A stretch of 64,000 bases of DNA from Diplonema japonicum (GCA_964019335.1 OZ025692.1:310001-374000); one strand, 5' to 3'; shown: positions 2,398 to 62,897, counted from the first letter of the stretch. Numbers and translations: made by a program. Notes: a model not told the origin generated them from the sequence alone.

Positions 2398-3129
2398 AAA
2401 AAGCTATTTATTAAATGAAAATCAGATAGCCTGATTTCACGCGTGGGGTCCCCTTTTTTTGACGAGTGATTTTACTTCACTCGCTTCGCTCGTGAAGTAA
2501 AAAAACGAGTCAAAAAAAGGGGACCCCACAAGTGAAATCATGCTCTGATTTTATTCAATACTGCATTTTATTTAATGATGAGCTGCTCTCGAAAAGAATT
2601 TAGGTGCTAAGTGTGGCTTCGCTGCTGCCTGCTTGTAGCGGCGCAATGCGCGAGTCTTTACTGAACACGGTACTGGGTTTGGTATGATCAATTCGGCGAA
2701 TCGATGTTGACGTTTATGTCAAACGTGATTCTGTGCACTGCTGAAGAAGTGGGCTGTGTCGAAGGGGGCAGGGCTGAAGGGGGCGTGGGTTTGATCGAGT
2801 GGTAGGTGCAAAACCTCTCCCACTCCTTCTTGTAGGCTATTTTGCTTGCCGTTGGAAGCGTGTCTTCCATCACAGCTTTGGCCTCTTTCTCGAGGCTGAT
2901 GCCCTTGGCTCGCTTCCCGGTCGCCTTCGGTTTTCTTCCCATTTTGCTAGAAATGACTGTGGGCGTGAAATAAAGTACCTGATTTTCACGCCCAGCAAAA
3001 TCAGCAACGTTTGGCTTAAAAACATGAGGAAAAAACCAGATACTTTATTTCACGCCCGTGAAATAAAGTGAAACCTGATTTATATCTTCCCGGCCTAAAT
3101 TCTTTGAGAGAGCTGCTCAGAATTAAATA
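2398..3129 (+). mobile_element. Non-autonomous Crypton-like (tyrosine-recombinase) DNA element, family 1, copy A (722-bp body 2403-3124)
   Basis: Near-identical inverted copy at 61560-62281 with unrelated flanks. Begins GCTATTTA, hairpin 2415-2557, internal inverted repeat 2571-2604 matching the end 3094-3127. Sits in a poly-A tract and carries an 84-aa remnant ORF. Confidence 0.85.
2688..2942 (-). pseudogene. Internally deleted recombinase remnant in element family 1 (84 aa)
   Basis: EAKAVMEDTLPTASKIAYKKEWERFCTY resembles the LPxxSxxxYxxxWxxF start of the core-binding region of Crypton-type tyrosine recombinases. It runs directly into a P/S/T linker and a ITFDINVNI tail; no catalytic domain. 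Judged by eye. Confidence 0.55.
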
Positions 3130-3134
3130 AAATA

Positions 3135-3191
<57 letters not shown>

Positions 3192-4101
3192 GCTCTTTTT
3201 TTACAGTTCTTCATACTAGCCGTGAGCCTATTGTACTCAGTGAAAGAATCGTAGAATCTCTTCGCCTTTTTGGCCGAAATGCTCACGTGTACTTAACTAC
3301 TGAACGGTACACTTTGAAGCCGACAAAGAATTGTTTTTTTTTTTTTTTTTTTTTTTTCGTTACGTTTTTTTCTTCTTTTTTTTTTCCTCTCTTTAAGTTT
3401 TGTCTAGAAAAAAAAAAAAAAGGTTTAAGGCAAATACCCTCGAAAATCAGGCAAAGAGGTTGTGGAAGGGTCCCACAGGAAAAAAAAAGAATAAGAACAA
3501 TAGAAAAAAAAAAAAAAAAAAAAAAAAAAGAAAGAAAGAACAAGAGAAGAAAAGAAAACTCGATAAAATTTCAGTTTGCATGGGGGTGCTCACTGTTCAG
3601 GTAGAAATTCACACTAATCGGTCACCTAGAAAAAAAAAAAAAAAAAAAAAAATATTTTCTCTTACCCTTCTAAAAGAAAGACATCGCTCTATAGTAGCTC
3701 ATGCTCACAAAGGCAACAAATAAGGCAAGAAGACAAACAGCAAAATTTACTATCTTATTTTCCTTACATCATCATTCCAGGTTAAAGAGAGACTATGGTT
3801 GTATTTCTTTTTCTCTTTTTTTCTTTTAGATATTGGGCAAAAGGGGAAAAGGGGGGGGCAGGAATTTTGATTCCCCCCCCCCCCCCATTTTACTAGCATT
3901 TACTTTTGTGCACGACGGCTACAAAAGTAATCTTTTTTTTCTTTTTTCATTTTCTTTTTTTTTTTCTAAATATATTTGTTCCCGCGTCGTCCGACGCTTG
4001 CCGGAAAAAAAAAAAAAAAAAAAAAAAAGGAAGGGAGTAACTGTTTGGGAGCAAACAGTTTAAAAAAAAAAAAAAAAAAAAAAGAGAGGGATGAATACAT
4101 T

Positions 4102-4849
4102 TCAATAAGATTCCTCGACAGTGTGCTCTTCCTCTTGGTAGAGCACGTGCTGCGTTCGGTAAATGGTTATCCTCCTTTTTTTCGGAGTCGAGGGCACAGC
4201 TGGCTCCTCTACCTCTTCAACAAACTCCGGCTGCTCGTACCGTTCCAGCGACTGCGCCTTTTTCAAGACCCCCTCTTGCTCAGCCAACCTGATGCGTTTG
4301 CCAGAGGGTACTCCCAATATACTCTCCGAGTTCTCATTCCTGACGGAGTGGGAAAACCGACATTCCTGTTGAAGTATGGAATTTTTTTTTTTTTTTTTTT
4401 TTTTGAAATCATACCTCACCATAGGAACACCGACCCATGGTGTGGTGCCTGCAAATATTCGAGTAGATTTTGGGGTTGAAGCTGTGTTTAAATCGGCACT
4501 TTTCACCATAGGAGCATCGTGACAATGCCCAGTGCCTGCAGATACTTGGGTCCAGGGGTACTTGTGTTGTGGGAGGGATTGGTGCGGATTGCCGCTCGCC
4601 TTGTTCGTCGTGTCCAGGGACTCCGTAGGGGTAGCCGAAGACGATGCCTTCCGGGCTCTTCACCTCTTGCACTTTTTGTTCAATTTCTTCTATTTCCTCG
4701 TTTTTTTCTTGGTGGTAGAAGCGGCACTCATCCCCGAACGTGCACTTACTGTGCATCCAGTGCCTGCATACCCCTTCGGTTTCCCGTGAGACCCGTGGGG
4801 GCCGTTCATCTCCCAACCCCGTGAGGTTTTGTTCCAAGGTCAGTCCCAT
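4102..4849 (-). CDS. Triple CCCH zinc-finger RNA-binding protein (exons 4415-4849, 4102-4365)
   Basis: Three C-x7-C-x5-C-x3-H motifs. The third (CRHHTMGRCSYGE|ECRFSH) is completed only by removing the GT-AG intron 4366-4414. Confidence 0.85.
4366..4414 (-). other. Spliceosomal intron, 49 nt, poly-A core
   Basis: GTATGA...CAACAG; removal completes a CCCH finger. Confidence 0.85.
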
Positions 4850-4990
4850 TTTTTCTTTTTTTGAACTTTTGAAGAAAAAAAAATTGGTCGGGGAAGGAAA
4901 AAAAAAAAAAAAAAAAAAAAACCACAAGAAAAACGAAAACTCTAGCAAGGAAGGACTGAATAGGAGAGAAAACAAAAAAAAAAAGTGAAC

Positions 4991-5021
<31 letters not shown>

Positions 5022-5041
5022 CCCATCCCATTTTCTCACTT

Positions 5042-5744
5042 TCACATCAACAATTTCCTCACTTTTGACACAGGGTGCGTCTCGACACCACCGTCGGAGA
5101 ATCGGACCGAATATTGCGATTCTGGATTTTTTTTTTTTTTTAAATATAAATTCCATACCTTCTGGGAAGAACGTGACCACCTCTGCTTGCCTGAACCCGT
5201 CCGGAAGGTCAACCACGATCTTGGTACTTGGGGAAAGTGCTTGATGTGCTGTTTGGCTTGCGAGAAGCGGTACCTCACATCGCGCCATCGAAGGTTGGTA
5301 GTGGAGTTCCCCGGCTTCCCGTTGGGTCATCGACACCCAGTGGGAAGCTGTTACATCTGACGGTGTTGGTGCCACGGTAGGCCGTGTAACCGTTTCGTAG
5401 GGCCGTTTTTCACCCACGTTATGGATTTTCCCTCCGGTGGTCACCCTGGCACCCACGTCCCCCCACATCATTCTTCCCATCCATGCTCTTGTCCATTCTA
5501 ATGTTGTTTTTTTCCTGATTTTCTGAGGTGGAGGCAATGGTGCCTCGCACTCTTCGCTGAGCACGCTACCGGTCTCCGTTACTGTCTCGTGTGTTTTTAT
5601 CAACCTGTCTACTTGATCGTCCGTCCACTCCTCACCCATTCTCACCAGCTTGTGCATGTAGAAGGAACTCTCTTGTTTTCTCATTTTGTTTTCATGAGGC
5701 TGTGCCTGTTTGAAGTCAGACCTGGCCATGTGCTTCGCTGCCAT
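5042..5744 (-). CDS. Hypothetical protein with C-terminal Tudor/SH3-like barrel (exons 5159-5744, 5042-5121)
   Basis: Removing the 37-nt GTATGG...CAG intron 5122-5158 gives KIVVDLPDGFRQAEVVTFFPEESQYSVRFSDGGVETHPVSKVR, a Tudor-like pattern. Confidence 0.65.
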
Positions 5745-6255
5745 TTTATGTTTACCCTCCGCCTTTTTTTTCCCCCCTTCTTCTTTTTTTCTTCTTTCCT
5801 CGGGAAAGAAGGGTGCAAGTATATATATATAAGGAAAAGCGAAAGAAAAAAAAAAAAAAAAGGGTTATTTACCTCTGTTCCCTCCCCCCTTTCCTCCCTT
5901 TTTTTTTTTTATTTGGCACAAATAGGGGGATAGGATTTCTTTTTTTTTCTTTTTTTTTCTTTCTTTCTTTACTAGTATCGTCGTGTTGCGGTACCTCAAA
6001 AAAAAAAAAAAAATAAGCAGTTTGTAAGTTAATGTGTTCTCCTTATCTTTTCTCTCTCTCTCGAAACGTATAGACACCACATGCAAAAACACGGGTAGCT
6101 TTGAAGCTTTGAGTGTGATGTGGCCACATCACCTTTTTACCCCACTGAACGGGTCAACTGGGAAAGGGGCAGGGGAGGTACTTAAAAAAAAAATGGTGCT
6201 TCTCAAGGGTGATATTTTCTTTTTCTTCATCTCTGAGAGCTTCTTCTTCTTCTTC

Positions 6256-6289
<34 letters not shown>

Positions 6290-6337
6290 TAAAAAAGAAA
6301 TTCTATTTTTTGTTTTTTCTTTCTCTTAAATCGCTTC

Positions 6338-6889
6338 CTATCTCCGTTCGTCTTCTTCTTCTTCCTCTTCGATGACGGTTGCCCCCGATGCGTACTGCAT
6401 GAAAATGTTTTTGTCCACATCATTCACCTTCTCGCTGAGGTAGGTAGGCAGGAGGGCGGACGACATCCTACAGGGCCTGTTGATCCAGAGGGGGAAGGCC
6501 TGGGGGATATGAGGAAGTAGCTCCCGACACAAAGCTTCACTGAAATCGTTACAGTTGGTGTGGACGAGGTGGTACTTAGAGCTGGCCCACGTCACATCTC
6601 GCATTGTGGCCACAGCCTTGCCCACGTCTTCTCGCGTCAGTGAGGTGGTGCCCAGGTATAGAGATTTTTTGAATGTGTGTCCCTCGTATGACCTTGGTGG
6701 TATCTTGTATACCCCGCGCTCATCAGTGCTTCTGCCGAAGCCAATTTCTTCACCGTAAATCTCCACCCCTGTGTGGTACGCCCCCCACCCCACCATGCCC
6801 AGGACATTATTCGCCCATGTGATGTCGTAAATATTCAGGTACACGTTCTCGTCTCGTGGCTCGATCATTTCTTCGCCTCCGCACCACAT
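6338..6889 (-). CDS. PPPDE/DeSI-family deubiquitinase/desumoylase
   Basis: VYLNIYDI, GAYHTGVEIYGEEIGFG and YHLVHTNCNDFS motifs with catalytic His and Cys. Confidence 0.92.
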   Translation of the reverse strand: MWCGGEEMIEPRDENVYLNIYDITWANNVLGMVGWGAYHTGVEIYGEEIGFGRSTDERGVYKIPPRSYEGHTFKKSLYLGTTSLTREDVGKAVATMRDVTWASSKYHLVHTNCNDFSEALCRELLPHIPQAFPLWINRPCRMSSALLPTYLSEKVNDVDKNIFMQYASGATVIEEEEEEDERR

Positions 6890-7374
6890 CGTTGTTATAT
6901 TCTTTCTCTTTTTTTTTTTTTCCTCTTTCCTTTTCGTTTGTGTGGTCGAATCGACAGAAAGAAAGGGAGGCAGAATAACAAAATTTCAAAAGGGGAAGAA
7001 CAAAAAAAAAAAAAGAAAGAAAGAAAAATGGGATTCACAATCTAGGGTGTGTGGGTGGAGTTATAATTTTAAAAAAAATCAGGGAAAATTACAAACAGAA
7101 TTGGGAGGGGAAGGGGGGGTAGTATAACAAGGAGAGAAAGGGGAACATCACAATATGATGGAGAGAGAAACGAAAAAAGAAGAAGAAAAAAAAAGAAAAA
7201 AAAAAAAAAAAGGTAAGAGACAACAAAAACAGCATTTCTTCCTTTTTTTTTTCCCCCCCTTCCTTTTTTTATTTGACAAACATTTTTAAAGACCCAATAA
7301 TTCCCCAATAACAAACAAACAAGTTTTTTTTTTTTTCCTCCTCCCTATTTCCTTTCTTTTTTTCCGCTAGAGTC

Positions 7375-10300
7375 TCAATTCAATACCCGTGGTGCCGGCA
7401 GGGGGTTCGGGAGTTGCGACGCTGGAGGTGGCACAACAGAGGCAAGAGCAGCCTCTTTCGCACGCAAATCGGTACATTCAACGGTCAACTGGGAGAGCTC
7501 TGTCTCGAGTATAGCCTTCTGTTCACATAGGCGGATGAGCTCACCTGCGATGTGGTTCTGCCCCTGTTCTGCCTTGACCAGCATCTCAGGCTTCTGCCGC
7601 ACAAGCGACATCAGGTCCTCTTCAGTCTGGGCAATACGTGCCCTGCACTTGATGGCCTCCGCCTCGATGCCCTGTGTGTCGTACTTCACCAACTGCTGCC
7701 TCCAGTAGTTCACATTGTTCAGCAGCGACTGCTGCTGCCCGTCTATGGTGGCAAGCGTTTTTTCCCTGTGCTCCACAAGTTCCACCTCTTTCATCTTCAT
7801 CTCCAGAATTTCCTTGTTCAGCCCCCCCAGCACTATCCTAAGTTCCTCTGCTTTTTGCTCCCTTCTCAGCCTGCTCTGCTCATGTGCCTCTAGCAGCGTC
7901 CTCACCTTCGACTCATTCCTTGGCGACATGCTCCCTGTCGGCATCCTCGGCTGTGGCGGTGGCGGTGGTGGTGACATGTCCCTTGCCTCGTGGTGCTCCC
8001 GGCCACCCCGCGCACGGATCGGGCTCACAGTCCTCAGCTGCGTTGGCAACGGCTGGTTGATGAGGCTCTCCATGCTCTCCAGCATCTGCTCGATCTGCTC
8101 CACTGAAGGCCCTGCCTGCGGACGCGGTTGCTCGACTCTCGGGGCCACAGGCGAGGGAGACGGGATGTCGTGGTGGAACAGCGGCGGTGGTGGGGAAACC
8201 TCAGTCCTCCTGGGGCTGTGGCCTCTCCTTCTGGGTGGGCTGACGCGCTTGGGGTCCACGGGTACGACGGACTTCGTCGGGAGAGGGATGCGTGCACGTG
8301 CGGGAGAGTTCGTCCTTGAGATGGACGCACTAGGGGGCTCGCTCTTCCTTCTCGGGAATGCAACATGGCTTACTTCCCTGCTTGCGGGCTGCATGCTAGC
8401 AGCGGACTGTACGTGTAGTGGCATCACGGCCGGCTGTAAGGGTGTGGCGGGGAGCAGTTCCGTCACTGTTGCTGTCATGGTTGTGCTGGCGATCTGTGAG
8501 TGTCGCCCCCGCAGGTGCAGCTTGGACAGCTTCTTCTTCAGCAAAGCATTGGTCCTCTTTAGCATGGCAGCATTCCGCTTCAACTGCTTTAAGTCTTCGA
8601 TCTTCTGCATTGCAAGGCCCAGTTGCGCGTCCTTCTTCTTCAGCAGGTTTACTTTCGCGTCTTCTTCAGCAAGTTTTGCAGAGATCCATGCCTTCCATTT
8701 CTGCACCTTTTCGATTGCCCCAACAACGGGATCGCTGCTGAGGTCTGGGTCGGGTGCGATCTCGTCTATCAGTGTCGTGAGCTTGTTGCGGAGTGCCTCT
8801 TCTTTCCGATCCTTCATCAGCAGCTGGTCAGTTTTTGTTGACAACTGCTGCCGCAGCCTTTCCAGCTCCTGTTCGGCAGCTTCTGCTAGCGCACTGGAGG
8901 CCACAGCCTTGCCCTCAGCATCCTTGTTGCTCTTGTCCACAAGTGCGTTCTGCAGACCGTCAGCGTGCTCTTTTTGTATTGCGGCCTCCCTCTCGGCAGA
9001 GAAGGCACGCCTCTCAAGGGAGTGCGATTCGTCCCTCAGCCCCTCGAGCTCCTTGCGCAAGAACTCCGTTTTCGTGGCGATCTCCTCTCTCAGGCGCTGG
9101 TTCTCCGCCTTCAACACATCAACATCCTTCCGCACGGCCTGTGCTTCGAGGGTTGCACAGTCAAGTTCCTCCTGTCGCTTTTGAAGCATGTTCTGCAGTG
9201 CTTCTAGTTGTGACTGGTGCTGGTTGCACTCGTTCTCGAAGAGCTTCATGGTCTCCGCCTGCCTCTTCGCTTCTACTTCTGACAGCTCTGCCTGCGCCTT
9301 GACGAGAGCGTCCCTCTCAGCAAGGTTTTTGCACAGCGCGTCTATTTTGTCGTCGGCATTGGCGACTTGGCTCTGCAGCTGCAGAATCTCCGACGTTTTG
9401 ACAGTCAGCTCGCCCTGCGCTGCAGCAAGATCCACAGACTTCGTGGCAAGCTCCTCCGACCTCCTTGCCAAGTCGGCACGTAGTGCGTTTACCTCAGCAT
9501 GCAGTTCCGTAACCTGGCACCTCAGCTGCACTTCACTCGTCTTTTGCTGCCCTGCTGCACGTTCCCTCTCCATTGCCAAGTCCCTCTCGGCGCTTCTTTG
9601 GTTATCCTCAGCTTCTCGTAGGGCATCTTTCAGTCTATTCACCTGGTTTTCCAACTCATGCTGCCTCTGTTGGTTCCTCTTCAGTTCGTTTTGGTACTTT
9701 GCTCTCAGGTCTTCAAGTTCCTGTGAGGCTGCACGCTCTGCCTTCTTCGCTTGGAGGTTCTGTTCGGTGAGAAGCATGTTCGCCTCGCGCAGCTTCCTCT
9801 CGGCATCGCTCTTCGCGTCCTCTAGGGAGCCCCGTCTGGACCTCAGCTCGGCTATTCTGATATTGGCTTCTTCAACTTCGCTGGCAATGCGTTCCTTCTC
9901 CCTGCGCCTGATGGCCTCTAGTTCGTCTTCAAGCTCCTCAACTCTCTGCTTGAGGTTGTTCCTTTGTTGCTTCATCATCTCGAGTTCCCTCGCCAACGAC
10001 CTGGTGCGCATGATCTCTTCGTCCTGAGGCTGCGTGGCTGCTGTCGCTGCTGGCGGCGGTGCAAACGGTCTCCTCATTGGGGACTCGTGCGAAGGAGGCG
10101 TCGGTTGTGGTCTTGACTGCGACCTCTGCAAGGTTTGGCTGCCCTGACGCCTGATCACCGGCGGCGAAGGTGCAACCAGCGACTTCGCTTCATCAAGCTG
10201 GCCCCGCAAAGCATCGAGGCTGGCCTTGTGGGCCTCCTCCATTTCCTGCCTCAGCCTGCCCAGCTCCAGTTCCATCACCTTATTCATGCGGTCGCGCTCA

Positions 10301-34490: not shown

Positions 34491-34992
34491 AAATAGCTAT
34501 TTACTGCCAACAAGTAATGACTTTACCGTTACCTCGAGGTTCCGAATTTTACCGTCGAGGGCCCGCAGGGCCCGAGATGGTAAAATGCGGAACCGAGAGG
34601 TCGGTAAAGCATTACTTGGCGGTAGGTAAGTGGTTTTATTTCACGACACTCAGAAATTACTTCACCACGAGGGGCACAACAGGGTGACAAGGGGTACAAC
34701 AAGAGAGGGGTTACAAAGGTTACAATACAAGTTGTTTTCCCTCCTTTGCTGGAGCCGAGGCAAAAGTTGGCCAATTGAGCTGAACCTGGGGGGAAATAGC
34801 AAACTGAGAGGAAAAAGTAGCCCCACTGGGAACCGAACCGAGGCAAAAATTGGCCTACCGCAGGCATATTATTTAACGGAAATCCCCTATTACTTCACGG
34901 AAAACAGGCCATTATTTCACCGTGAAGTAATGAGATTTAGCGTGAAGTAATGGGCCCCCCAGTGCGTGAAGTAACTTCTGAAGAGTGAAATA
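34491..34992 (+). mobile_element. Non-autonomous hairpin element, family 2, about 500 bp
   Basis: AAATA-GCTATTTAC start, hairpin 34500-34630 with GCA loop, inverted repeat 34634-34665 matching the end 34966-34995, CGTGAAGTAA repeats, GAGTG-AAATA end, poly-A on both sides. Confidence 0.75.
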
Positions 34993-48606: not shown

Positions 48607-48672
48607 TGGTTAGGAGGGGGAGGGGAGGGGTCGCTGTGGTGGTTTATTTTTTACCCACCCCGTTTTTCTTTT

Positions 48673-49245
48673 TATTTCACTCTTCGTCATTTTCTTCACT
48701 CACTAGGGGCCTCATAATTTAACGCGAAACGGCCATAATTTAACGCGAAAAGCTCATAATTTAACGCGAAATCGCCATAATTTAACTAGTTAAATTATGA
48801 GATTTTGGAGTTAAGTTATGGGGCTTCAGAGTGAAAAAATGGGTCTTGTCGTGGAAAAAAATGTACCCAACCCCTTGAAAAATTTTTTTGGGGACGGGGT
48901 ATTTTGACTATTTTTGGCCATTTGAGGCCATTCCAGCCCTTAAAAGTGGGAATAAGTGCTTTACTTCCCCTTTAAATGCCACGGCGAAATAGCAACCCCA
49001 TATTACCTTAGGAAAATCCCCAAAAAGGCTGACCTGCGTGAAAAAAAACAGCAGTGAAAGCAGTGAAGAGTGAGTGACTCAAATGACGAAGAGTGAAATA
49101 AAACGACTTACTTGCCGCCAAATGAGCCATTATTTAACTCTTGTTACCGTTTTTTTGCACGAGGGCCCGCAGGGCCCTCGTGCAAAAAATTCGGGAACTC
49201 GAGTTAAATAATGGCTCATAATTTGTTGGCAATAAATAGCTATTT
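48673..49245 (-). mobile_element. Non-autonomous hairpin element, family 3, 573 bp
   Basis: Minus strand starts AAATA-GCTATTTATTGCCAACAA (family 2 has GCTATTTACTGCCAACAA). Hairpin 49108-49235 has a perfect 18-bp inner stem; inverted repeat of about 35 bp at 48670-48704 and 49070-49103; 21-bp-period CATAATTTAAC repeats. Confidence 0.8.
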
Positions 49246-52434: not shown

Positions 52435-52509
52435 TTTTTTTTTTTTTTTCTTGTTTCCCTTTTTTTTTTTTTTTTTTGTTCAGATATGATATGAAAAAAA
52501 AAGGGAAAG

Positions 52510-52546
<37 letters not shown>

Positions 52547-52581
52547 TGGGAATGACAAAATAAAAAAAAAAAAAAAAATTA

Positions 52582-53730: not shown

Positions 53731-54562
53731 TTTTTTATTTTTATTTTTTTTTTTTAATTTTTCCTCCCTCCTCCATAAGGTTTCGAAATTTATAAAAAAA
53801 AAAAAAAAATGGGAGAGGATAGTGTGTGTGTGGAAAGGAATGGGGAGGGGGGGTTTTTTTTTTAAAAAAGAAGGGATGGGGTAATAAATAAGAAAAAAAA
53901 AATGGGGCTTTGGTTGCAGCACTATTTGGCGTTAAGTGTGCAGCGAAAAAAAGAATTTTCAAAAAAAATATAAAAAAAAAGCTTTCTTTTTTTGTTTCCT
54001 TTTTTTTTTTTGCAATCTCTGTTCCCCTCCCACCAACCCTTAGAAACTTGGTTACCATGTATGGTAAAAAAAAAAAAAATGTTCTTTTTTTTGTTTCCTT
54101 TTTCTTTTTTTTTTTCCTTTCGCTTTTCAGTTTTTTTTCTTCTCTTGGTTCTTCCTTAAAGGAAAGTTAACGGTGGTAAGGAAAAAAAAAGGGCGGATGG
54201 GGGAAAAATTAGGGGGGGGGGGGGGGCAACTGCTATTTCTCTTTTTTAAAATTAAACGATGGGGGGAAGGGTTTCTGTTGAATTCTTTTCTTTTTTTTTT
54301 TCCTCTCGAAGCAAAAAATAAATAAATAAAAAGGAAATGTCTTTAGCTGCCTCTAAAAAAAAAAAAAAAAAAAAATCGTTGACTTATAAATAAAAAAAAA
54401 TGTTTTTAAGGACCTTTTAAAAAAAAAATTATTATTTCTTATACGAACACATTAAGAAAACCGCATCTGTGTCAGCAGTGATGGTGTTAAAATGATCAAT
54501 AGGGACAAACCTGCAATTTTTTTTTAAATCTTTCCCCCCCCCCCCCCCCCCCCACCCCTTTT

Positions 54563-56677
54563 TTAAAAATCCTCATACATAAATTTCCCAGCTGCAACCT
54601 CGACCGTATTCCCCCCTTTGTAAGCAAGAGGAGATTCACTCTGACCCCAGTTTACAGGCAGCGCACCAGTAAACACGGCCGCCCTGCAAGCAGGATACGA
54701 CGGTGTGATAAGACTGTAACAAGACCCAGGGAAAATTGTCACACGGATCGTCCCTGACAGGACGAGATACGCTGTATGCTTGTCCTCAGAACGAAGAGAA
54801 AACTGCACGGACGCAGGCACAGTCTTCAACGTCACCCTGCACAGGGAATACCCTTCAAGCATCTTCTTCTCCGGATCCGGGATGACACTTTCCGGAAGGA
54901 GGCAGTCAGAAACTGTTAAAGCTGTCGGTTTTGCCTCGTTCCACGACTTACCCCGAACGACGTAGTGGGTCGGCATCACAGGACCGCTTGCACCGTCTTT
55001 CCAAGCAAGCGAACCATCAACCTGAACAATTGCTTCACCATCCTCGCTTCCTATCACGCCAGAAGGACTGATTAAATGTCTAAATGACGATTCTGAAACA
55101 TGTGATAACGACGGCCAACCGTCTGGAACTGCGACACCATGGTTACCGATAAATGGCCGGCCCGGCTGCATTGACGTTCCGACCTCTGCGGTGGTGTGGT
55201 CGGGGTTTGCATTTTGAGCAGCGCCATCAAAGATAGAAATCCATTTCGCAAACGCTGGTTTACTGTCGCACCAGATGTGAATCGGCGGGGAAAAGGGATT
55301 GTACACTGCAAACACCCACGGATGCTCCGGCTGCGGTGCCTTTAATATCCGGGAATACCTCAGTCTATGAACATCCAGCCCTGCAGTATCTGTTCCCTTT
55401 GCGTCTCTAAACGTGTAAAAAGTATCGTGAACGGTAACCCATCTACGCTTCCAACCGTCTGAAAGCCAACCTCCACTCTCAACCTGAATAATAACGTAAC
55501 CAGATGCAACGCACGATGGGAGATCATCCGGTACCTTTCTGAAGTCCACACAGGGAACAGGTTTCGCAACGTGAACTTGCGTGATTAAACGTTCGTACAC
55601 CGTCATGCGCTCCTCGTGGATTCTTCTGTTGGGGTTCATTTGCGCGGTGGTGATGTCGATCAGAGCGCACCAGATGTCCCTTTCGAGCTCCGTGTAGAAT
55701 GTCAAACTGAGCAGGTCACCCGATTTATTTTTGATTTTCAATGGGTGCTGCATCATCCTGTTGGGTCCTATAATCATAGAGGCAGTTTCTACTGAAACGT
55801 TGTTCAGATTGAACTCTTCGTAAGTTTCGGCAGATGGGGTTGGAGCGTGGTACAATTTCCTGTCGTGTAGAACAAACCATTCAGGTGTGTTTGAAGCTCC
55901 CAACCAACCTTCGGAGATAACCCACGCGTAGCAGCTGTGCCCTAAAGCCTTGTTTTGTAAAAACTTCGGGAGGGTGATGTTTACAGACGGCTCGTCTTGT
56001 TGTTGTTGTTGTTGTTGTTGTTTTTCCTGTTTTTCCTCTTTCCACGGAACGTTGGCAGGCTGGTTCATCACACAGCATGCGAACGGTTTTGAAGAGTAAT
56101 CTGTAGGTACCGCTGTTTTTCCTTCTTCCTCCTCGGAGATTTCATTGAAAAGTAGGGTTCGCTTGCCCATGCATGAACCATTTGCTCCAAGGATTGTTTG
56201 AGTTAGGGCGAGAATTCTGCCAGGGGATTCTCTTTGCAGCCAGTGAATTTTGTTTTGTCCAATTGCCACCCATGTGGGTTGGAAAAGCTCGGGTTTAGGG
56301 AATTCTGGTGTTTCTTCAACGCTTTTAATTGGAAGGATCTCGTCGTTGATTTTTAATGTTGGCCGTCCGTCTTCTCCAGAGTCGTTGATTTCCCATGCGG
56401 GGTCGGGGCTTGCGTTTACTTGTGGGGTTTTGGACCTTCTTATCGTGAAGGATAGTTCTTTGCACACCCATGTACCTTCTCGCGGCCTCTCCACGGTGTC
56501 CGGCCATGGGTTTTTTATCAACACTGGTGGGGTCTCGTTGCCCTCCACCTTCTTTTCCGTTTTTTCCTCTCCGCTCACCACTTTCACCTGTTCGTTTTGC
56601 TTTTCTTGTTGGGCTGCTTTTTTCGGTTGTTGTTCCTTCTTCTGCTCCTCTTCACCGCCTACCAACCATGAAAACAT
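54563..56677 (-). CDS. Tandem PH-domain protein
   Basis: WFVLHDRKLYH...ERDIWCALI and SGYV...WKRRWVTV...AFAKWISIF. Confidence 0.8.
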   Translation of the reverse strand: MFSWLVGGEEEQKKEQQPKKAAQQEKQNEQVKVVSGEEKTEKKVEGNETPPVLIKNPWPDTVERPREGTWVCKELSFTIRRSKTPQVNASPDPAWEINDSGEDGRPTLKINDEILPIKSVEETPEFPKPELFQPTWVAIGQNKIHWLQRESPGRILALTQTILGANGSCMGKRTLLFNEISEEEEGKTAVPTDYSSKPFACCVMNQPANVPWKEEKQEKQQQQQQQQDEPSVNITLPKFLQNKALGHSCYAWVISEGWLGASNTPEWFVLHDRKLYHAPTPSAETYEEFNLNNVSVETASMIIGPNRMMQHPLKIKNKSGDLLSLTFYTELERDIWCALIDITTAQMNPNRRIHEERMTVYERLITQVHVAKPVPCVDFRKVPDDLPSCVASGYVIIQVESGGWLSDGWKRRWVTVHDTFYTFRDAKGTDTAGLDVHRLRYSRILKAPQPEHPWVFAVYNPFSPPIHIWCDSKPAFAKWISIFDGAAQNANPDHTTAEVGTSMQPGRPFIGNHGVAVPDGWPSLSHVSESSFRHLISPSGVIGSEDGEAIVQVDGSLAWKDGASGPVMPTHYVVRGKSWNEAKPTALTVSDCLLPESVIPDPEKKMLEGYSLCRVTLKTVPASVQFSLRSEDKHTAYLVLSGTIRVTIFPGSCYSLITPSYPACRAAVFTGALPVNWGQSESPLAYKGGNTVEVAAGKFMYEDF

Positions 56678-56967
56678 CGTGTCTTTTTTTTTTTTTTTTT
56701 ATAAAAAGAATCCCCCGCCCCTCACGTCTTTTTTTTTTTTTAAACCCCCGTTTTGGGTACTGAAAAAAAAAGAAAATAATAATAAAGAGTAAAAAAAAAA
56801 AAATTGGAGATGGGGAAAAGTCATTAAAAAATATTTTAAAAAAAAAAAAAACTAAAGAAAAAAAAAAAAAAATAAAGTCCCCTTTTCAAAAAAGGGGATT
56901 TTTTTTTTTTTTTTTTTGTGACACTTTTTTTTTTCCCCTTTTTTTTTTTCTTTCTTGTCCTCATAAT

Positions 56968-57891
56968 CTACCTTCTCCTCTTTTTGTCGCGGTCGCGGGA
57001 GCGGGTGTACGAAGAGGATTCGGACGAAGACGGCGAGCGGCGCCTCTTGCGCCGCCTCTTTCTGTCGCCGTAGCTGGACGATGACGAGCTGGGGGAGCGG
57101 CCTCTGCGGATGAACCGACGGCCGCGGGAGGAGCCCCAACGGGACCATTCCCCACGCTGCCCACTGTATCGACAGACCCACGTGCACTCACCATCGTTGA
57201 GCGACACACCAAGGTCACGGAGCTCATCACGAAGCTCGTCTGCACGAGAGTAGTCTTTCGAGTTCTTTGCGTTCTGCCTCTGCTGACACAGGTCATCCAC
57301 GTCCATGCTGTCCACAGACTCGTTACGCCTCTTTCTCAGATGCCCGTATGATCCCCGCTTCCCGCATTTTGAACGCCATTCGCAGTTGAGGTCGTTGGTG
57401 TCGACGCCCATCCTCTTGAGTTCCCGTTGTATGCCGTCTGCTTTTTCGTAGTTTCTCACCTTTCTCAATGCCTGCCTTGCGTCACACATCTCTTGCACCT
57501 TTTCTTCATCGACTGATGAGTAGGAGCTGCTTCTTCTCCTTCTTCTTCTCGGGCTGCGTTTTGGGCTTCTTCTGCTTCTCCTTGACAGGCTTTCCGATCT
57601 TTCCCTCCTCGGTGAGCGGCTTTCCCTCCTCGGTGAGCGGCTTACTTCGCGGGCGTGTCTTTCCTTCCTCGGTGAGCGGCTTTCCTTCCTCGGTGAGCGG
57701 CTTAATTCGCGAGCATGTCTTTCCTTCCTCGGTGAGCGGCTTTCTTTCCTCGGTGAGCGGCTTACCTCGCGGGCGTGCCTTTCATTCCTCGGCGAGCGGC
57801 TTTCCTTCCTCGGCGAGCGGCTTACTTCGCGGTCGCGCCCTCGTTCCTCGCTCTTGGGTTTCTTGGCGACCTCTTGCTCCGTGTCTGACAT
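56968..57891 (-). CDS. RS-repeat protein with two CysRS anticodon-binding-like helical domains
   Basis: SRSPR repeats and an SR tail flank RQALRKVRNYEKADGIQRELKRMGVDTND...W and RQNAKNSKDYSRADELRDELRDLGVSLND...W. Confidence 0.75.
   Translation of the reverse strand: MSDTEQEVAKKPKSEERGRDREVSRSPRKESRSPRNERHAREVSRSPRKESRSPRKERHARELSRSPRKESRSPRKERHAREVSRSPRRESRSPRRERSESLSRRSRRSPKRSPRRRRRRSSSYSSVDEEKVQEMCDARQALRKVRNYEKADGIQRELKRMGVDTNDLNCEWRSKCGKRGSYGHLRKRRNESVDSMDVDDLCQQRQNAKNSKDYSRADELRDELRDLGVSLNDGECTWVCRYSGQRGEWSRWGSSRGRRFIRRGRSPSSSSSSYGDRKRRRKRRRSPSSSESSSYTRSRDRDKKRRR
57600..57835 (-). repeat. 60-bp coding tandem repeat, four copies (EVSRSPRKESRSPRKERHAR)
   Basis: Four aligned 60-nt units, each containing two 21-nt subrepeats. 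Confidence 0.9.
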
Positions 57892-58319
57892 TTAAATGTT
57901 TTTTTTTTTTTGCTTTTCTTATTGTTATTTTGATACCAAAAAAATAGAGCTGTTGTGGTTTTGTTTTGTTGTGAGGGGGGGCTTGTTAAGTTGTCTTTTT
58001 CTTTATTTTTTTTTTTTTCCATTTCGCCATCGAGCATCGGAGGTCGAACAGCGTGCATCCTGTGGCCGGCCGACTAAGCTGGCAATTCAGAAAAAAGACA
58101 AACAAAAAAAAAAAAATGGGGTGTCGCCCTTGATAAACGTGATACCAGGCATTTATTTTCTTTTTTCCCTCAAGACCCACACACGTGGTCTCCTCGAATT
58201 CGTCGCGTGTCACGTGGTTCACGGTTCTGTTGCCCGGTCCGCAAGAAGACCGGGGTGGTGGGGGATGGGGGTTCTTGGCTACGAATACCGCCCTTTTTTT
58301 TTTAAAGTCGTGTGTCGCA

Positions 58320-60540
58320 TTTCTGTGTGCTGGACCCAACTTGCGGAAACCATAGAAGAATAGGGGGGAAAGAAAGAAAGAACTCAGACGGGCAGCTCAC
58401 CTGTGCGCCAGTCCAACTTGTGGAGACCGGCGTTGGCAGAAAAAGGAGACACTTGTTCTTCGATACCACCTTGGGGGAAGCTCTGGTTTCGTATCGGGTC
58501 GGGTGTCGGGGTCCTTCCCCACAGCTCTGTGATCAGTCATAGTGAAAAGAGGACTGGTGTGTGCGAAGAGGAACAAGATAACGTTTCATTATTTCATGAT
58601 ACCACCTTATCCACAGAAGACAAAATATCGCTACGTCTACACAAACGACTCCTGTGTGCCAGCCCAGCTTTGTGGTGACCAGCATGAACAAGAAGGGGAA
58701 AGAGAGGGGGGGGGAAACAAAACGACAAGTTTATACCACCTTTTATTGTCGAAAAACTGCAAGGAAGAATGAAAATACATTTCGTGTCCTTTAATACATC
58801 CTCATTGACAGCTCACCTGTGTGCCAGTCCAACTTGTAGAACCAGCATTGGCAGAAAGGGAGACACTTGTTCTTCGATACCGCGTGAAATTCTGATTTCG
58901 TATCGGGTCGGGTGTCAGGGTCCTTCCCCACAGCTCTGTGATCAGTCATAGTGAAAAGAGGACTGGTGTGTGCGAAGAGGAACAAGATAACATTTCATTG
59001 TTTCATGATACCACCTCACCACGAACAAAAGGACCCACTCACGATACCGCGGTGTCGCCACGGGGCCCGGTGTTAATTGAAAAGGAAGAGGAAGCATCAG
59101 CTCACCTGTGTGCTAGTCCAACTTGTAGGACCAGCATTGGCAGAAAGGGAGACACTTGTTCTTCAATACCACCTAGCTCCGGGTGAACATCTGGTTTCGT
59201 ATCGGATCGAGGTCCTTCTGCAGGGCTGTGATCAGTCATAATGAAAGAGGACTGGTGTGTGCGAAGAGGAACAGGATAACGTTTCATTATTTCATGATAC
59301 CACCTTATCCACAGAAGACAAAATATCGCTACGTCTACACAAACGACTCCTGTGTGCCAGCCCAGCTTTGTGGTGACCAGCATGAACAAGAAGGGGAAAG
59401 AGAGAAGGGGGGGGGGGGGGGGGGGGAAACAAAACGACAAGTTTATACCACCTTTTATTGTCGAAAACTGCCTCGAAACACAAAACGAGCCCTGTGTGCC
59501 AGCCCACTTGGTGACCAGCATTAAAGACAAGAGGCGGGGGGGGGGGGGGGGAGAAGAATGAAAATACGTTTTGCGTCCTTTAAAGCAATACACCCTCATT
59601 GACAGCTCACCTGTGCGCTAGTCCAACTTGTGGAACCAGCATTGGCAGAAAGGGGGACACTTGTTCTTCGATACCGCGTGAAATTCTGATTTCGTATCGG
59701 GTCGGGTGTCAGGGTCCTTCCCCACAGCTCTGTGATCAGTCATAGTGAAAAGAGGACTGGTGTGTGCGAAGGGGAAGAGGATAACATTTCATTGTTTCAT
59801 GATACCACCTCACCACGAACAAAAGGACCCACTCACGATACCGCGGTGTCGCCACGGGGCCCGGTGTTAATTGAAAAGGAAGAGGAAGCATCAGCTCACC
59901 TGTGTGCTAGTCCAACTTGTAGGACCAGCATTGGCAGAAAGGGAGACACTTGTTCTTCAATACCACCTAGCTCCGGGTGAACATCTGGTTTCGTATCGGG
60001 TCGGGTGTCGGGGTCCTTCTGCAGGGCTGTGATCAGTCATAGTGAAAGAGGACTGGTGTGTGCGAAGAGGAACATGGCCATGATACATGTGCCACCTTAC
60101 AAAAATATCGCTACGTCTACACAAACGACTCCTGTGTGCCAGCCCAGCTTTGTGGTGACCAGCATGAAGGGGGAAAGGAAGGAAAAAAAAAAAGGCGACC
60201 TTAGAAATAAAGGGATATCACCTTGCCTCTGAGTCGGGTGTGGCCCTTCCCTGCAGCGCTGTGATCGGTCATTTTTGAAGACGACCGGTGTGTGCGAAGA
60301 GAATGGTAGAACATTCATTTCGGAGACACTTGTTGTTCAATACCACCTTGCTCCGGGTGAACATCTGATTTCGTATCGAGTCGGGTGTCGGGGTCCTTCT
60401 GCAGGGCTGTGACAGTCATAGTGAAAGAGGACTGGTGTGTGCGAAGAGCAGGAATGAAGGGGAAAGGAAAGAAAGAAAATACGATTCTCCTTCGGCTCCA
60501 GACCGAATCCACTATTTCGCTGTCACCTGTGCGCAGCCCG
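58320..60540. repeat. Modular degenerate tandem array with a 794-bp higher-order period
   Basis: Module A (cagctcacctgtg...) at 58393, 58809, 59098, 59603, 59892. Module B (ctgtgatcagtcat...gaggactggtgtgtgcgaag) in 7 copies, module C (cctgtgtgccagccc) in 4. 58809 to 59603 and 59098 to 59892 are both 794 bp. Confidence 0.9.
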
Positions 60541-60681
60541 TCTTAGAGAGGCCAGCGGGTATCAAAGGTGTTTGTTTTGATTTTGAAAACAAACAAGAAA
60601 TGACAAGAAGCAAACCTTGCCAACAGCACTTTGCTCTTTTGAACCGTTGCTGTGCACACTCCAGCCACAGGAGTGGTGTGG

Positions 60682-60682
<1 letters not shown>

Positions 60683-60721
<39 letters not shown>

Positions 60722-60722
60722 T
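60683..60722. repeat. (TTA)n microsatellite
   Basis: About 13 tandem TTA units. Confidence 0.9.
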
Positions 60723-61068
60723 GTCAATGCACGTGAAAACCAAATATAAAATAACACAGTAAAAAAAAAAGAAGAAGAAAAAAAAGGGAGGCGAAGGGAG
60801 AAACTTATACACACTCTTACTTTTTTTTTTGTTTGTTTTCTTCGTACCTCAGCCTTGTCTCCTTTGTCGCTAGGAAAGCAAAGCCTACAACCCTCCCCCC
60901 CCCTCCCGAGTGAGAGGAGAAAAAAAAAAAGAGAACTATGAAAGGAAGAAGAGGGGGAGGGAAATAAAAACTCGTGCGACTTTCTCTGTATCCCTTTTTT
61001 TCTTCTTCCCTAAAAGGCCATGTTTCTGCCTTTTCTCTCCCTCTCTTTTCACCTCGAACTAATATTTC

Positions 61069-61108
<40 letters not shown>

Positions 61109-61243
61109 TGTGTGTCCCTCTCTCGTTCCCCCTGGCGGCTTTTTTAATATGTGGTTAGAACTTGCCACCAAGATGGGTCTCATTTTTTTTTTTTTTTTTT
61201 TTTTCCATTTTTTTTTAATTTATTCCCGCGCAAATATTTTGTT

Positions 61244-62897
61244 CTAATCGCCGAGTCTTCTACCAGTTCCCCACCTGTGAGGTGCTTGGGCCCCAGGAAC
61301 CTGCTGGCCCCTGTTGTCCGGCATGAAGGTCTGTTTTTTTTTTTTTTTTTTTTCCCTTTTTTTTTTTCTTCCTTCTGTCTTTCAATTATTTGACACATAC
61401 CTGAGCCCCCGCAACAGATGTCACAGCAACTTTCTGGGGAGGGAAAATATTGTACATGAACTGAGGAGTGTTCATGATGGAGATGTTGTGAGTGTTGGGG
61501 AAGACATCCTTGGTGCAGACATAGAAGTGGCCCGCTGTTTTTTTTTTTTTTTTTAATTTAATTCTGAGCAGCTCTCTCAAAGAATTTAGGCCGGGAAGAT
61601 ATAAATCAGGTTTCACTTTATTTCACGGGCGTGAAATAAAGTATCTGATTTTTTCCTCATGTTTTTAAGCCAAACGTTGCTGATTTTGCTGGGCGTGAAA
61701 ATCAGGTACTTTATTTCACGCCCACAGTCATTTCTAGCAAAATGGGAAGAAAACCGAAGGCGACCGGGAAGCGAGCCAAGGGCATCAGCCTCGAGAAAGA
61801 GGCCAAAGCTGTGATGGAAGACACGCTTCCAACGGCAAGCAAAATAGCCTACAAGAAGGAGTGGGAGAGGTTTTGCACCTACCACTCGATCAAACCCACG
61901 CCCCCTTCAGCCCTGCCCCCTTCGACACAGCCCACTTCTTCAGCAGTGCACAGAATCACGTTTGACATAAACGTCAACATCGATTCGCCGAATTGATCAT
62001 ACCAAACCCAGTACCGTGTTCAGTAAAGACTCGCGCATTGCGCCGCTACAAGCAGGCAGCAGCGAAGCCACACTTAGCACCTAAATTCTTTTCGAGAGCA
62101 GCTCATCATTAAATAAAATGCAGTATTGAATAAAATCAGAGCATGATTTCACTTGTGGGGTCCCCTTTTTTTGACTCGTTTTTTTACTTCACGAGCGAAG
62201 CGAGTGAAGTAAAATCACTCGTCAAAAAAAGGGGACCCCACGCGTGAAATCAGGCTATCTGATTTTCATTTAATAAATAGCTATTTTTTTTTTTTTTTTT
62301 TTTTCCCCATACCAACAATCCCGCAAATATCCCCGAAGGGGGACGAACCCATCAGCACGTGAATCAGGGTCAAGATCCAGGGGAAATACCCGGCCTTGAA
62401 CGCAAAGCCGTAGAACACCAACTCCTGCTGTTCGTGACGCTTGCACCAGACCCACACAATGCCCATAATGAACGACAGGGACAGGACCTTGAGGCTGAAA
62501 AACACCGCCAAAGGAACAAGAACCAGCACGATGGCCAACATCATCCAGACGTGGTCTGCCGTCCTCCCCATGAAGCCCAACGGGTAGTCCTCTTCTTCCA
62601 GCCGCTTCTGGTAGATCACAAAGAACACCAAGTTGAACATAAAGCTCATCGAAAAGGGCCCCAGAAAGAACGCACTGGTGACCAGCCTCCATGGTTCGGT
62701 CAAGAGCAGGGGGAAGACGAAGAAGAAGTGCGTGAAATCAACCAACTCGAACGAGGCCGCGGCTCCGAGCGCCTGTTTTTTTTTTTTTTTTTTTTTTTTT
62801 TCTTTCCTCCTCCCCTCTAACACACCATGCAAATAACCAACGTGAATTTTGTAATAGGGCCGAGCGACGACCACCAAGACTCAAAGGTCTGCGCCAT
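61244..62897 (-). CDS. DER1: Derlin (Der1-like ERAD protein), 4 exons
   Basis: Spliced product MAQTFESWWSSLGPITK...EPWRLVTS...GIVAGHFYVCTKDVFP...HRWGTGRRLGD* (WR motif, GxxxG, SHP box). Introns 62773-62825, 61535-62312, 61331-61400. Confidence 0.92.
61555..62286 (-). mobile_element. Crypton-like element family 1, copy B, inside Derlin intron 2 (body 61560-62281)
   Basis: Reverse complement of 2403-3124 with one substitution noticed. Flanked by the two halves of the intron's poly-A tract. Confidence 0.88.
61742..61996 (+). pseudogene. Recombinase remnant ORF of copy B
   Basis: Same 84-aa translation as 2688-2942. Confidence 0.55.

What the first reader, a model, noticed from the sequence alone, without database searches (positions are those of the whole stretch)
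2398..62286. Three families of poly-A-targeting hairpin elements share one architecture: a probable Crypton-like tyrosine-recombinase transposon system
Seen: four insertions (2398-3129, 34491-34992, 48673-49245, 61555-62286) in three families with unrelated interiors. All have (i) an A-rich 5-bp core plus GCTATTTA at one end, (ii) a 130-150 bp imperfect hairpin just inside it, (iii) right after the hairpin, a 30-35 bp sequence complementary to the opposite terminus (an asymmetric inverted repeat), (iv) repeated short motifs near the far end, and (v) A-run flanks with no conventional TIR/TSD arrangement. Known: Cryptons are tyrosine-recombinase DNA transposons lacking TIRs, with short terminal direct repeats and presumed circular intermediates. 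Inference: these are non-autonomous members of a diversified, active Crypton-like lineage in a euglenozoan, adapted to this genome's homopolymer tracts. I do not know of such a lineage being described in this group.
Basis: partly seen in the sequence, partly recalled or inferred. Interest (0 to 1): 0.85.

Follow-up and report, generated by a model that had tools for sequence, protein, structure and literature searches.

The report
Hairpin-ended tyrosine-recombinase transposons in a diplonemid
The four repeats are real, cut-down copies of very small jumping genes moved by a Cre-like tyrosine recombinase in a marine protist, and their ends are built like those of rolling-circle Helitron2 elements, a combination I found no report of.

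Summary

- **Copy number.** All four insertions sit at the stated coordinates (within about 4 nt). They belong to families with dozens (family 1) to hundreds (families 2 and 3) of candidate places in the 62.5-Mb genome.
- **Coding.** Family 3 is an ORF-deleted derivative of a 1.66-kb autonomous element. That element's only gene is a 378-aa Cre-like tyrosine recombinase with the R-K-H-R-W-Y residues. Family 1 keeps an 84-aa remnant of such a gene. Family 2 is non-coding but shares about 75% identical ends with family 3. No HUH, DDE or RT gene lies in the autonomous copies.
- **Shared layout** (ORF-sense strand): T-run, ATTT, 5' segment X, family-specific motif array, ORF, X' (complement of X), about 150-nt hairpin, AATAAATAG(C/T)T-ATT, T-run.
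- **Joined ends.** They fold into one long hairpin, z -9 to -17 against shuffles, with compensatory changes between families.
- **Head-to-tail joints.** The genome holds 38 exact joints reading tip-ATTATTT-X (control 0), including a tandem array of 1650-bp units.

Best reading: Crypton-type elements that move as circles and cross over at ATT^ATTT with T-runs. Circles, empty sites and any single-strand step are not shown.

This scan has reported the same element group in other windows of this genome.

The parts
2398..3133 (-). Family 1 copy, non-autonomous, 732 bp. Sub-parts on the + strand: tip 2402-2412, hairpin about 2413-2560, X' 2565-2604, ORF remnant 2691-2942, motif array 2961-3069, X 3094-3133.
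   Evidence: It is 99.7% identical to the copy at 61555-62286. Its 3' core reads TTTT instead of ATTT.
61551..62286 (+). Family 1 copy, 732 bp. Sub-parts: X 61551-61590, motif array about 61616-61720, X' 62080-62119, hairpin about 62124-62271, tip 62272-62282 followed by ATT.
61742..61996 (+). 84-aa ORF. It is a remnant of a tyrosine-recombinase gene: the N-terminal S..Y.K.W..F region fused to a C-terminal tail.
   Evidence: A profile of non-self homologues hits it at E 8.7e-8 and E 3e-6 in a six-frame screen. It is 38-45% identical to N-termini next to Phage_integrase hits elsewhere in the genome.
34491..34992 (-). Family 2 copy, non-coding and internally deleted. Sub-parts: tip 34493-34503, hairpin about 34504-34632, X' 34636-34665, motif array 34886-34954, X 34966-34992.
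48667..49245 (+). Family 3 copy, an ORF-deleted derivative of autonomous family A. Sub-parts: X 48667-48704, motif array 48711-48841, X' 49069-49106, hairpin 49122-49219, tip 49231-49241 followed by ATT.

Best explanation
The four insertions are MITE-like, non-autonomous members of a diversified group of very small DNA transposons that encode only a tyrosine recombinase. That makes them Crypton-type in the broad sense. The host is a diplonemid, probably Diplonema japonicum.

Shown here:
- the shared end architecture;
- its conservation through compensatory change;
- the recombinase gene in full-length relatives;
- high copy number and recent activity;
- orientation-specific insertion in T-runs;
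- recurrent head-to-tail joints reading tip-ATTATTT-X.

Inferred mechanism:
- The recombinase excises the element as a circle whose joint reads AATAAATAG(C/T)T-ATTATTT-X.
- It recognises the tip, which all families conserve, and the family-specific roughly 10-nt motifs. These motifs lie on both sides of the joint, in the hairpin arms and in the 5' array.
- It exchanges strands at ATT^ATTT with a T-run (TTT^TTTT). The asymmetric 7-nt core fixes the orientation and leaves ATT(T)/ATTT at the two ends without a true target duplication.
- X, X' and the hairpin make the joint part of a roughly 250-nt imperfect palindrome. It may bring the two ends together or be presented as a cruciform or folded strand. 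Which of these happens is open.
For: **Recombinase**
- The family A ORF (L043:4285-5418) scores 36.7 bits on PF00589, and family C scores 64 bits.
- phmmer against 1.84 billion representative proteins gave 1549 relatives.
- The catalytic hexad is kept: R142, H249, R252, W275 and Y284 are invariant and K169 is nearly invariant (at least 90%) in a 50-sequence alignment.
- The profile of that alignment hits Cre at E 2e-18 with the catalytic residues aligned.

**Derivation and age**
- Family 3 is family A minus its ORF.
- Family 1 holds a recombinase remnant.
- Two family A copies are 99.7% identical over 1679 bp with intact ORFs. Only 3 intact family A ORFs exist genome-wide, against hundreds of family 3 places.

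**Architecture**
- Joined ends fold at -68 to -87 kcal/mol, against -26 to -31 for shuffles.
- An element's own 5' end gives 30-41 pairs with the 3' module. Foreign 5' ends mostly give 0-13; the exceptions are families 2, 3 and A among one another, and family C's module, which pairs 21-31 with the 5' ends of families 1, 3 and A.
- Compensatory pairs number 9 of 39 and 9 of 48.
- Family-specific motifs lie in both the 5' array and the hairpin arms.

**Joints and orientation**
- 38 exact tip-ATTATTT-X head-to-tail joints, reversed-pattern control 0. They include joints between different families and a tandem array of at least 9 junctions spaced 1650 bp apart.
- The A/T alternation at the core falls exactly at the two junctions.
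- All sampled copies have T-runs, never A-runs, on the sense strand.
Against: - No circle, excision footprint or empty site was seen. The public runs offered are kept only as short contigs broken at the homopolymers.
- A canonical tyrosine-recombinase core site has inverted binding arms around the spacer. Here the tip and X are not inverted repeats of each other.
- Most junctions look like a fixed crossover point inside the 7-nt spacer. They do not show the whole-spacer exchange expected from two staggered strand exchanges.
- One copy (L042) is flanked by a 17-nt direct repeat, which a recombinase does not explain.
- Autonomous partners of families 1 and 2 were not recovered.
- Head-to-tail arrays are also what rolling-circle read-through gives.
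Confidence: 0.8

Rival explanations
1. Non-autonomous Helitron2/Helentron-like rolling-circle elements. An HUH Rep/helicase encoded elsewhere nicks at the T-rich ends. The asymmetric inverted repeat and the 3' hairpin mark the termination point, as described for Helitron2.
For: - The layout matches Helitron2: a 5' repeat at the very end, its partner just upstream of a 3' hairpin, insertion after TTTT without a TSD, and compensatory changes (PMC3627910; PMC10288648).
- Head-to-tail tandems are present.
- One copy has a long flanking repeat like the variable TSDs of the Chlamydomonas CRe elements.
Against: - Full-length relatives with the same ends encode only a tyrosine recombinase.
- A Helitron_like_N search of the whole genome found no candidate, although the control genomes could not ring for this family.
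- The repeats here are 30-40 nt with a 150-nt hairpin, against 8-15 nt repeats with the 3' one only 20-30 bp from the 3' end (so a much shorter hairpin) in Helitron2.
- Many tandem joints link different families, which read-through does not give.
Confidence: 0.04
2. Derivatives of tyrosine-recombinase retroelements (DIRS/Ngaro/VIPER/TATE type). They would be copied through RNA by the reverse transcriptase of the 4-kb family B. In that case X' acts like a DIRS internal complementary region that splints the two cDNA ends.
For: - The same genome holds a recombinase-plus-RT element (family B) that also sits in T-runs.
- VIPER and TATE are the known tyrosine-recombinase elements of Euglenozoa, and VIPER has a short derivative, SIRE (PMC12278014).
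- X' is complementary to the joined ends, which is the logic of an internal complementary region.
Against: - The family A recombinase shows no pairwise similarity to that of family B. A profile of family A's homologues scores family B only 20 bits.
- The autonomous 1.4-1.7 kb elements have no RT, no gag-like ORF and no split direct repeats.
- Closest named relatives are recombinase-only proteins of wasps.
Confidence: 0.04
3. Same recombinase elements, but the substrate is a folded single strand or an extruded cruciform, as in integron attC sites or CTX-phage integration by XerCD. One strand is exchanged at ATT^ATTT and replication resolves the junction.
For: - A junction-spanning hairpin of about 250 nt is kept by compensatory change in every family.
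- The apparent single fixed crossover point inside the 7-nt spacer fits this better than whole-spacer exchange.
- The tip of the family 1 hairpin is the very stable GCGAAGC mini-hairpin on the sense strand in 20 of 22 copies.
- Pyrimidine-pyrimidine oppositions outnumber G.A by 26 to 9 on the sense strand. These read as G.A on the other strand.
Against: - Sense and antisense strands fold equally well.
- The two strand signals point to opposite strands.
- Copies within a family are not independent.
- Covariation is also expected if both arms bind the same protein, or if palindrome arms homogenise each other.
- No source of single-stranded DNA is encoded.
Confidence: 0.25

Closest known systems
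Crypton DNA transposons (Goodwin et al. 2003; Kojima and Jurka 2011, PMC3212892)
   Same: - The only gene is a tyrosine recombinase.
- There is no RT and there are no terminal inverted or long direct repeats.
- Short direct repeats sit at the two ends (here ATT(T)/ATTT).
- A circular intermediate is presumed.
- Nearest named protein relatives are eukaryotic recombinase-only proteins.
   Different: - Neither Crypton paper I read mentions a hairpin. These elements have a 150-nt subterminal hairpin, a 30-40-nt asymmetric inverted repeat, motif arrays and an 11-nt tip conserved across families.
- They target homopolymer T-runs.
- They are only 1.4-1.7 kb long.
- They have large MITE-like progeny.
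- The host group (Euglenozoa) is new for Cryptons as far as the held library shows.
Helitron2 / Helentron elements (Bao and Jurka 2013, PMC3627910)
   Same: - Asymmetric terminal inverted repeats, with the 3' one just upstream of a 3' hairpin.
- Insertion after TTTT without a TSD.
- Compensatory changes that keep the pairing.
- Head-to-tail tandems.
   Different: - The enzyme is a Cre-like tyrosine recombinase, not a RepHel HUH protein.
- The repeats and the hairpin are several times longer.
Cre/loxP and Xer-type site-specific recombination; integron attC and CTX-phage folded substrates
   Same: - The protein profile matches Cre over nearly its whole length with the R-K-H-R-W-Y residues aligned.
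- A 7-nt asymmetric spacer fixes orientation.
- The joint lies within an imperfect hairpin.
   Different: - It is a eukaryotic transposon.
- There are no inverted binding arms directly around the spacer.
- Folding of a single strand is not shown.
VIPER/TATE and DIRS/Ngaro tyrosine-recombinase retroelements
   Same: - They use a tyrosine recombinase and occur in Euglenozoa.
- An internal segment is complementary to the ends.
- A relative (family B) lies in the same genome.
   Different: - No RT/RNase H, no gag-like ORF and no split direct repeats.
- The recombinase is not close to that of family B.

Membership tests
Crypton (tyrosine-recombinase-only DNA transposon) | Encodes a tyrosine recombinase with the catalytic residues | tested here: met
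   PF00589 is above its cut-off for families A and C. R, H, R, W and Y are invariant and K is kept in at least 90% of the 50 relatives, and these residues align with Cre's catalytic residues.
Crypton (tyrosine-recombinase-only DNA transposon) | No reverse transcriptase or other transposase in the autonomous element | tested here: met
   The 1664-bp family A element has one long ORF. Its two short antisense ORFs hit no Pfam family.
Crypton (tyrosine-recombinase-only DNA transposon) | No terminal inverted repeats and no long terminal direct repeats | tested here: inconclusive
   There is no symmetric TIR and no LTR. There is, however, a 30-40-nt inverted repeat between the 5' end and a segment about 190 nt inside the 3' end.
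Crypton (tyrosine-recombinase-only DNA transposon) | Short (4-6 bp) direct repeats at both termini, taken as the recombination substrate | tested here: met
   The element starts with 5'-ATTT and ends with AG(C/T)T-ATT(T)-3' in nearly all copies. A/T swaps are confined to this core. The tandem joint reads ATTATTT.
Crypton (tyrosine-recombinase-only DNA transposon) | Excision as a circle and reintegration | not testable with these tools
   Only indirect evidence: 38 head-to-tail joints and a 1650-bp tandem array. The reads offered were short contigs.
Crypton (tyrosine-recombinase-only DNA transposon) | Recombinase groups with a named Crypton clade (F, S, A, I and others) | not tested
   No reference Crypton sequences were on hand. 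Leads only: Trichogramma proteins, and ESM Atlas clusters with PF00589 with or without DUF3504.
Helitron2 / Helentron | RepHel (HUH endonuclease plus helicase) protein | tested here: not met
   The autonomous copies encode a tyrosine recombinase only. PF14214 found no candidate in the genome, but its control could not ring.
Helitron2 / Helentron | Asymmetric terminal inverted repeats plus a 3' hairpin; T-rich target; no TSD | tested here: met
   compared with PMC3627910.
DIRS / Ngaro / VIPER / TATE retroelements | RT/RNase H next to the recombinase; split direct repeats, or ITRs with an internal complementary region | tested here: not met
   Families A and C have no RT. Family B has RT and 150-bp direct repeats, but its recombinase is not close to that of family A.
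Folded single-strand recombination sites (integron attC, CTX-phage attP) | Imperfect hairpin that works on one particular strand | tested here: inconclusive
   The hairpin is present and covaries. Both strands fold equally well, and the two strand markers disagree.

The most novel reading that the evidence does not exclude
These would be the first eukaryotic tyrosine-recombinase transposons whose recombination site is a folded DNA hairpin, either a cruciform or a single strand. The hairpin spans the joined ends, with a single strand exchange at ATT^ATTT into homopolymer T-runs. That would be a convergence with integron attC and CTX-phage integration, and with the end design of Helitron2.
Probability: 0.25. 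Interest if true: 0.9.

Novelty: new variant of a known kind. Interest (0 to 1): 0.7.

Why it matters
**For transposon biology**
- Cryptons are the least understood class of eukaryotic DNA transposons. Their ends are poorly defined and no mechanism has been shown.
- This lineage has sharply defined ends, a conserved 11-nt tip and a 7-nt joint.
- It also has family-specific binding motifs, three intact source genes and hundreds of young progeny copies.
- Together these make it a tractable system for testing how a eukaryotic tyrosine-recombinase transposon moves.

**For the host group and for mechanism**
- It adds a class II element group to Euglenozoa. The known tyrosine-recombinase elements there are retroelements, and DNA transposons have only been reported as Merlin elements in Bodo saltans and Perkinsela (none is confirmed in trypanosomatids).
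- It shows that the 'asymmetric repeat plus hairpin' end design is not tied to HUH enzymes.

**Practical**
- Repeat annotators that key on structure would call these Helitrons.

Tried and rejected
- **Word-indexed protein search.** The family A recombinase gave nothing at E 1e-3. Only the exhaustive phmmer search found relatives.
- **PDB with the single protein.** Only a weak XerC-like hit. The profile was needed to reach Cre.
I therefore could not read the 1.3-2.0 kb contigs that carry the closest homologues, and do not know whether they have the same ends.
- **Metagenome scan with the protein alignment.** The first alignment was too diverse; the second found no relative.
- **Metagenome scan with the tip plus a T-run.** 120 or more chance matches, none with a hairpin or a recombinase.
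- **Reads**. All runs are kept as short contigs broken at homopolymers. They give no information on empty sites or circles, only about 100-fold excess depth over the element.
- **Genome-letter allowance.** The C69 recombinase copies (possible family 1 partners), the C36 tandem array and the family 2/family 3 heterodimers could be located but not read.
- **TSD test.** No consistent duplication. Near-equal T-run lengths on the two sides in four copies are unexplained, but long runs are common here.
- **Strand-polarity tests.** Inconclusive.
- **Second covariation alignment.** It failed when degenerate copies were included and was repeated without them.


Full report
**Observation**

The four stretches were read directly. 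On the strand that carries the recombinase ORF or its remnant, each has the same order of parts:
- a T-run and ATTT;
- a 5' segment X of 30-40 nt;
- a cluster of short repeated motifs;
- an interior;
- X', the complement of X;
- an imperfect hairpin of about 150 nt;
- the tip AATAAATAG(C/T)T followed by ATT, and then usually a T-run.

The repeat finder gave the hairpin arms and the X/X' pairs:

| Family | Hairpin arms | X/X' pair |
|---|---|---|
| 1 | 53 nt, 87% | 40 nt, 88% |
| 2 | not listed | 16 nt, 94% (seed) |
| 3 | 35 nt, 86%, plus a perfect 18 nt | 38 nt, 89% |

The tip occurs only four times in the window, once per element. The two family 1 copies are inverted relative to each other and 99.7% identical.

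**Copy number**

- Family 1: 216 first-look candidates, with full copies at 85-100% identity.
- Family 2: 621 candidates. Most are a 745-bp form 98-99% identical to the window copy, which lacks about 245 bp.
- Family 3: 547 candidates. About 40 scored full copies have near-identical scores, which points to a recent burst.
- Contig depth over the family 1 copy is roughly 100 times that of its flanks in four public runs.

**What full-length relatives encode**

A Phage_integrase profile search of the genome found 30 places. A Helitron_like_N search found no candidate, although its control genomes could not ring. Comparing 15 fetched loci with one another gave three repeat families.

Family 3 positions 1-345 and 350-573 align to L043 3936-4238 and 5368-5599, so family 3 is family A minus its ORF. 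Family A's only long ORF is 378 aa and passes PF00589. Its two short antisense ORFs hit nothing.
- *Family C* (about 1.4 kb) has the same architecture with different sequences and a decayed recombinase ORF. It is 24% identical to family A over the full length, E 7e-16.
- *Family B* (about 4 kb) is different. It has a recombinase plus RT and 150-bp terminal direct repeats, so it is a VIPER/TATE-like retroelement. Its recombinase shows no pairwise similarity to that of family A.

Family 1 holds an 84-aa ORF. A profile built only from non-self homologues recognises it (E 8.7e-8; E 3e-6 in a six-frame screen). It is 38-45% identical to N-termini lying a few hundred bases upstream of Phage_integrase hits on another contig. 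Families 2 and 3 have no coding remnant.

Genome-wide, family A has three intact ORFs at 99-100% identity, one copy with a stop, and fragments. At least four more diverged lineages at 27-40% identity exist.

**The protein**

- The word-indexed search found nothing. Exhaustive phmmer found 1549 relatives, the best full-length ones at 34-40% identity on contigs of 1.3-2.0 kb.
- In a 50-sequence alignment R142, H249, R252, W275 and Y284 are invariant and K169 is nearly so. All 50 members hit PF00589.
- The profile matches Cre at E 2e-18 across both domains. LR..E, K, H..R and W...Y align with Cre R173, K201, H289/R292 and W315/Y324; the Cre numbering is from my own knowledge.
- Named relatives are recombinase-only proteins of Trichogramma wasps.
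- ESM Atlas neighbours are eukaryotic PF00589 clusters, some with DUF3504. This is a lead only.

**The host**

All long ORFs of the window lie on one strand. A DEAD-box helicase is 66% identical to those of Diplonema papillatum and Rhynchopus, and 80% identical to an unnamed EukProt transcript. The assembly size (62.5 Mb) fits the published D. japonicum YPF1604 genome of 62.3 Mb (PMC13598402). Earlier notes of this scan name the same species.

**The end architecture is selected**

- I joined the 3' module to the 5' end with one copy of the core. Each of five families then folds into one continuous hairpin, at -68 to -87 kcal/mol. Shuffles give -26 to -31, so z is -9 to -17.
- An element's own 5' end contributes 30-41 pairs. 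For most pairings of distinct families, a foreign 5' end gives 0-13 pairs and costs about 20-30 kcal/mol. Exceptions are families 2, 3 and A among one another, and family C's module, which still pairs 21-31 with the 5' ends of families 1, 3 and A (family C shares part of X with family 1).
- Subfamilies of family 1 differ by compensatory changes at 9 of 39 pairs. Family 2 against families 3/A differs at 9 of 48 pairs.
- Each family has its own roughly 10-nt motif, 5-8 copies against 0.01-0.24 expected. The motif lies in the 5' array in both orientations and once in each hairpin arm. Motifs of unrelated families are absent.
- The 11-nt tip, by contrast, is shared by at least eight hairpin lineages.

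**Ends, target and joints**

- In 22 family 1 copies the 5' end reads TATTT (16), AATTT (3), TTTTT (2) or CATTT (1).
- After AGCT, the 3' end reads ATTT (15), ATTA (4), TTTT (2) or another sequence (1).
- The variation is therefore A/T exchange confined to the core at both junctions. Families A and C behave alike.
- All sampled copies have T-runs, never A-runs, on the sense strand, so insertion is orientation-specific.
- The genome is extremely rich in such runs: 382 runs of 8 nt or more in this window, 8.2% of its bases.
- I found no consistent TSD. One family A copy has a 17-nt flanking repeat.

Pattern searches of the whole genome found 38 exact head-to-tail joints reading tip-ATTATTT-X, with 0 in the reversed control. 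Among them:
- homologous dimers;
- 12 joints of a family 2 tip to a 5' end beginning CAC, mostly of family 3/A type. These may be copies of one composite;
- a family 1 joint that I also read directly;
- a run of at least 9 joints spaced exactly 1650 bp near one end of contig C36.

The 7-nt spacer ATTATTT has the length of a tyrosine-recombinase overlap region; that length (6-8 bp) is stated in PMC3212892. In single copies it appears split as ATT| at the 3' end and |ATTT at the 5' end.

**Mechanism**

The best-supported reading is excision to a circle whose joint is tip-ATTATTT-X, followed by recombinase-mediated exchange with a T-run. Resident tips followed by ATT and T-runs would be especially good targets. 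That explains both the heterologous tandems and the arrays.

Shown: the coding, the architecture, its selection, the joints and the orientation. Inferred: the circle, the binding sites and the crossover point.

Whether the long palindrome acts as duplex, cruciform or single strand is open:
- the two strands fold equally well;
- the GCGAAGC tip favours the sense strand, in 20 of 22 related copies;
- the mismatch spectrum favours the other strand, with 26 C.T against 9 G.A on the sense strand.

**Comparison with known elements**

- By the published definition these are Cryptons: recombinase only, no TIRs or long repeats, 4-6-bp terminal direct repeats, presumed circle (PMC3212892 and PMC13465315). 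Neither paper mentions hairpins.
- The asymmetric repeat plus 3' hairpin plus TTTT target is the published signature of Helitron2, which uses an HUH enzyme (PMC3627910).
- In Euglenozoa the described tyrosine-recombinase elements are the retroelements VIPER and TATE. No DNA transposon is confirmed in trypanosomatids (PMC12278014).
- The D. papillatum genome paper lists TATE, MULE and Helitron-like ORFs but no recombinase-only element.
- No held paper joins Diplonema with Crypton.

**Limits**

- The reads were only short contigs.
- The metagenome scans found nothing.
- This scan has already reported the same element group from other windows of this genome. My results agree with those notes on coding and architecture. 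They do not settle the single-strand idea.

Noticed in passing
L045:3530-7494, L047:3675-7593, L046, L054 (other contigs of the same genome): A roughly 4-kb retroelement with a gag-like ORF, a tyrosine recombinase and an RT. It is bounded by about 150-bp direct repeats that each hold a small hairpin, and it also sits in T-runs. It looks VIPER/TATE-like.
   Followed up: partly
G000:C36:574828-588061 (not fetched): At least 9 head-to-tail joints spaced exactly 1650 bp, that is a tandem array of one element family near a contig end. The same joint also occurs on C12, C14, C75 and C81. Matches to the N-terminal part of family 1's 84-aa ORF remnant lie about 200 bp from the C12, C14 and C81 joints.
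   Followed up: partly
L042:2125-2160 and 3800-3835: One autonomous family A copy is flanked by a 17-nt direct repeat (TTCTCAAGTCCCCCTTT). No other sampled copy shows such a duplication.
   Followed up: partly
12 places genome-wide, e.g. G000:C5:229325-229358 and C43:244755-244788: A recurrent joint of a family 2 tip to a 5' end beginning CAC (mostly family 3/A type) through ATTATTT. It is either a composite element that moves as a unit or repeated integration next to family 2 tips.
   Followed up: no
window 59237-59604: A segment with about 100-fold excess contig depth in public runs. It holds two poly-G runs of 18-21 nt and three copies of a roughly 35-nt motif (CTGTGTGCCAGCCCA...GGTGACCAGCAT).
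   Followed up: no
whole window: Extreme density of A/T homopolymers: 382 runs of 8 nt or more, 37 of 25 nt or more, 8.2% of all bases. All ORFs of 400 aa or more, apart from two that overlap longer ORFs on the other strand, lie on the - strand, as in polycistronic euglenozoan gene arrays.
   Followed up: partly
window 34491-34992 compared with L050:4133-4871: The window's family 2 copy lacks about 245 bp between its positions 257 and 262 that nearly all other copies carry.
   Followed up: no
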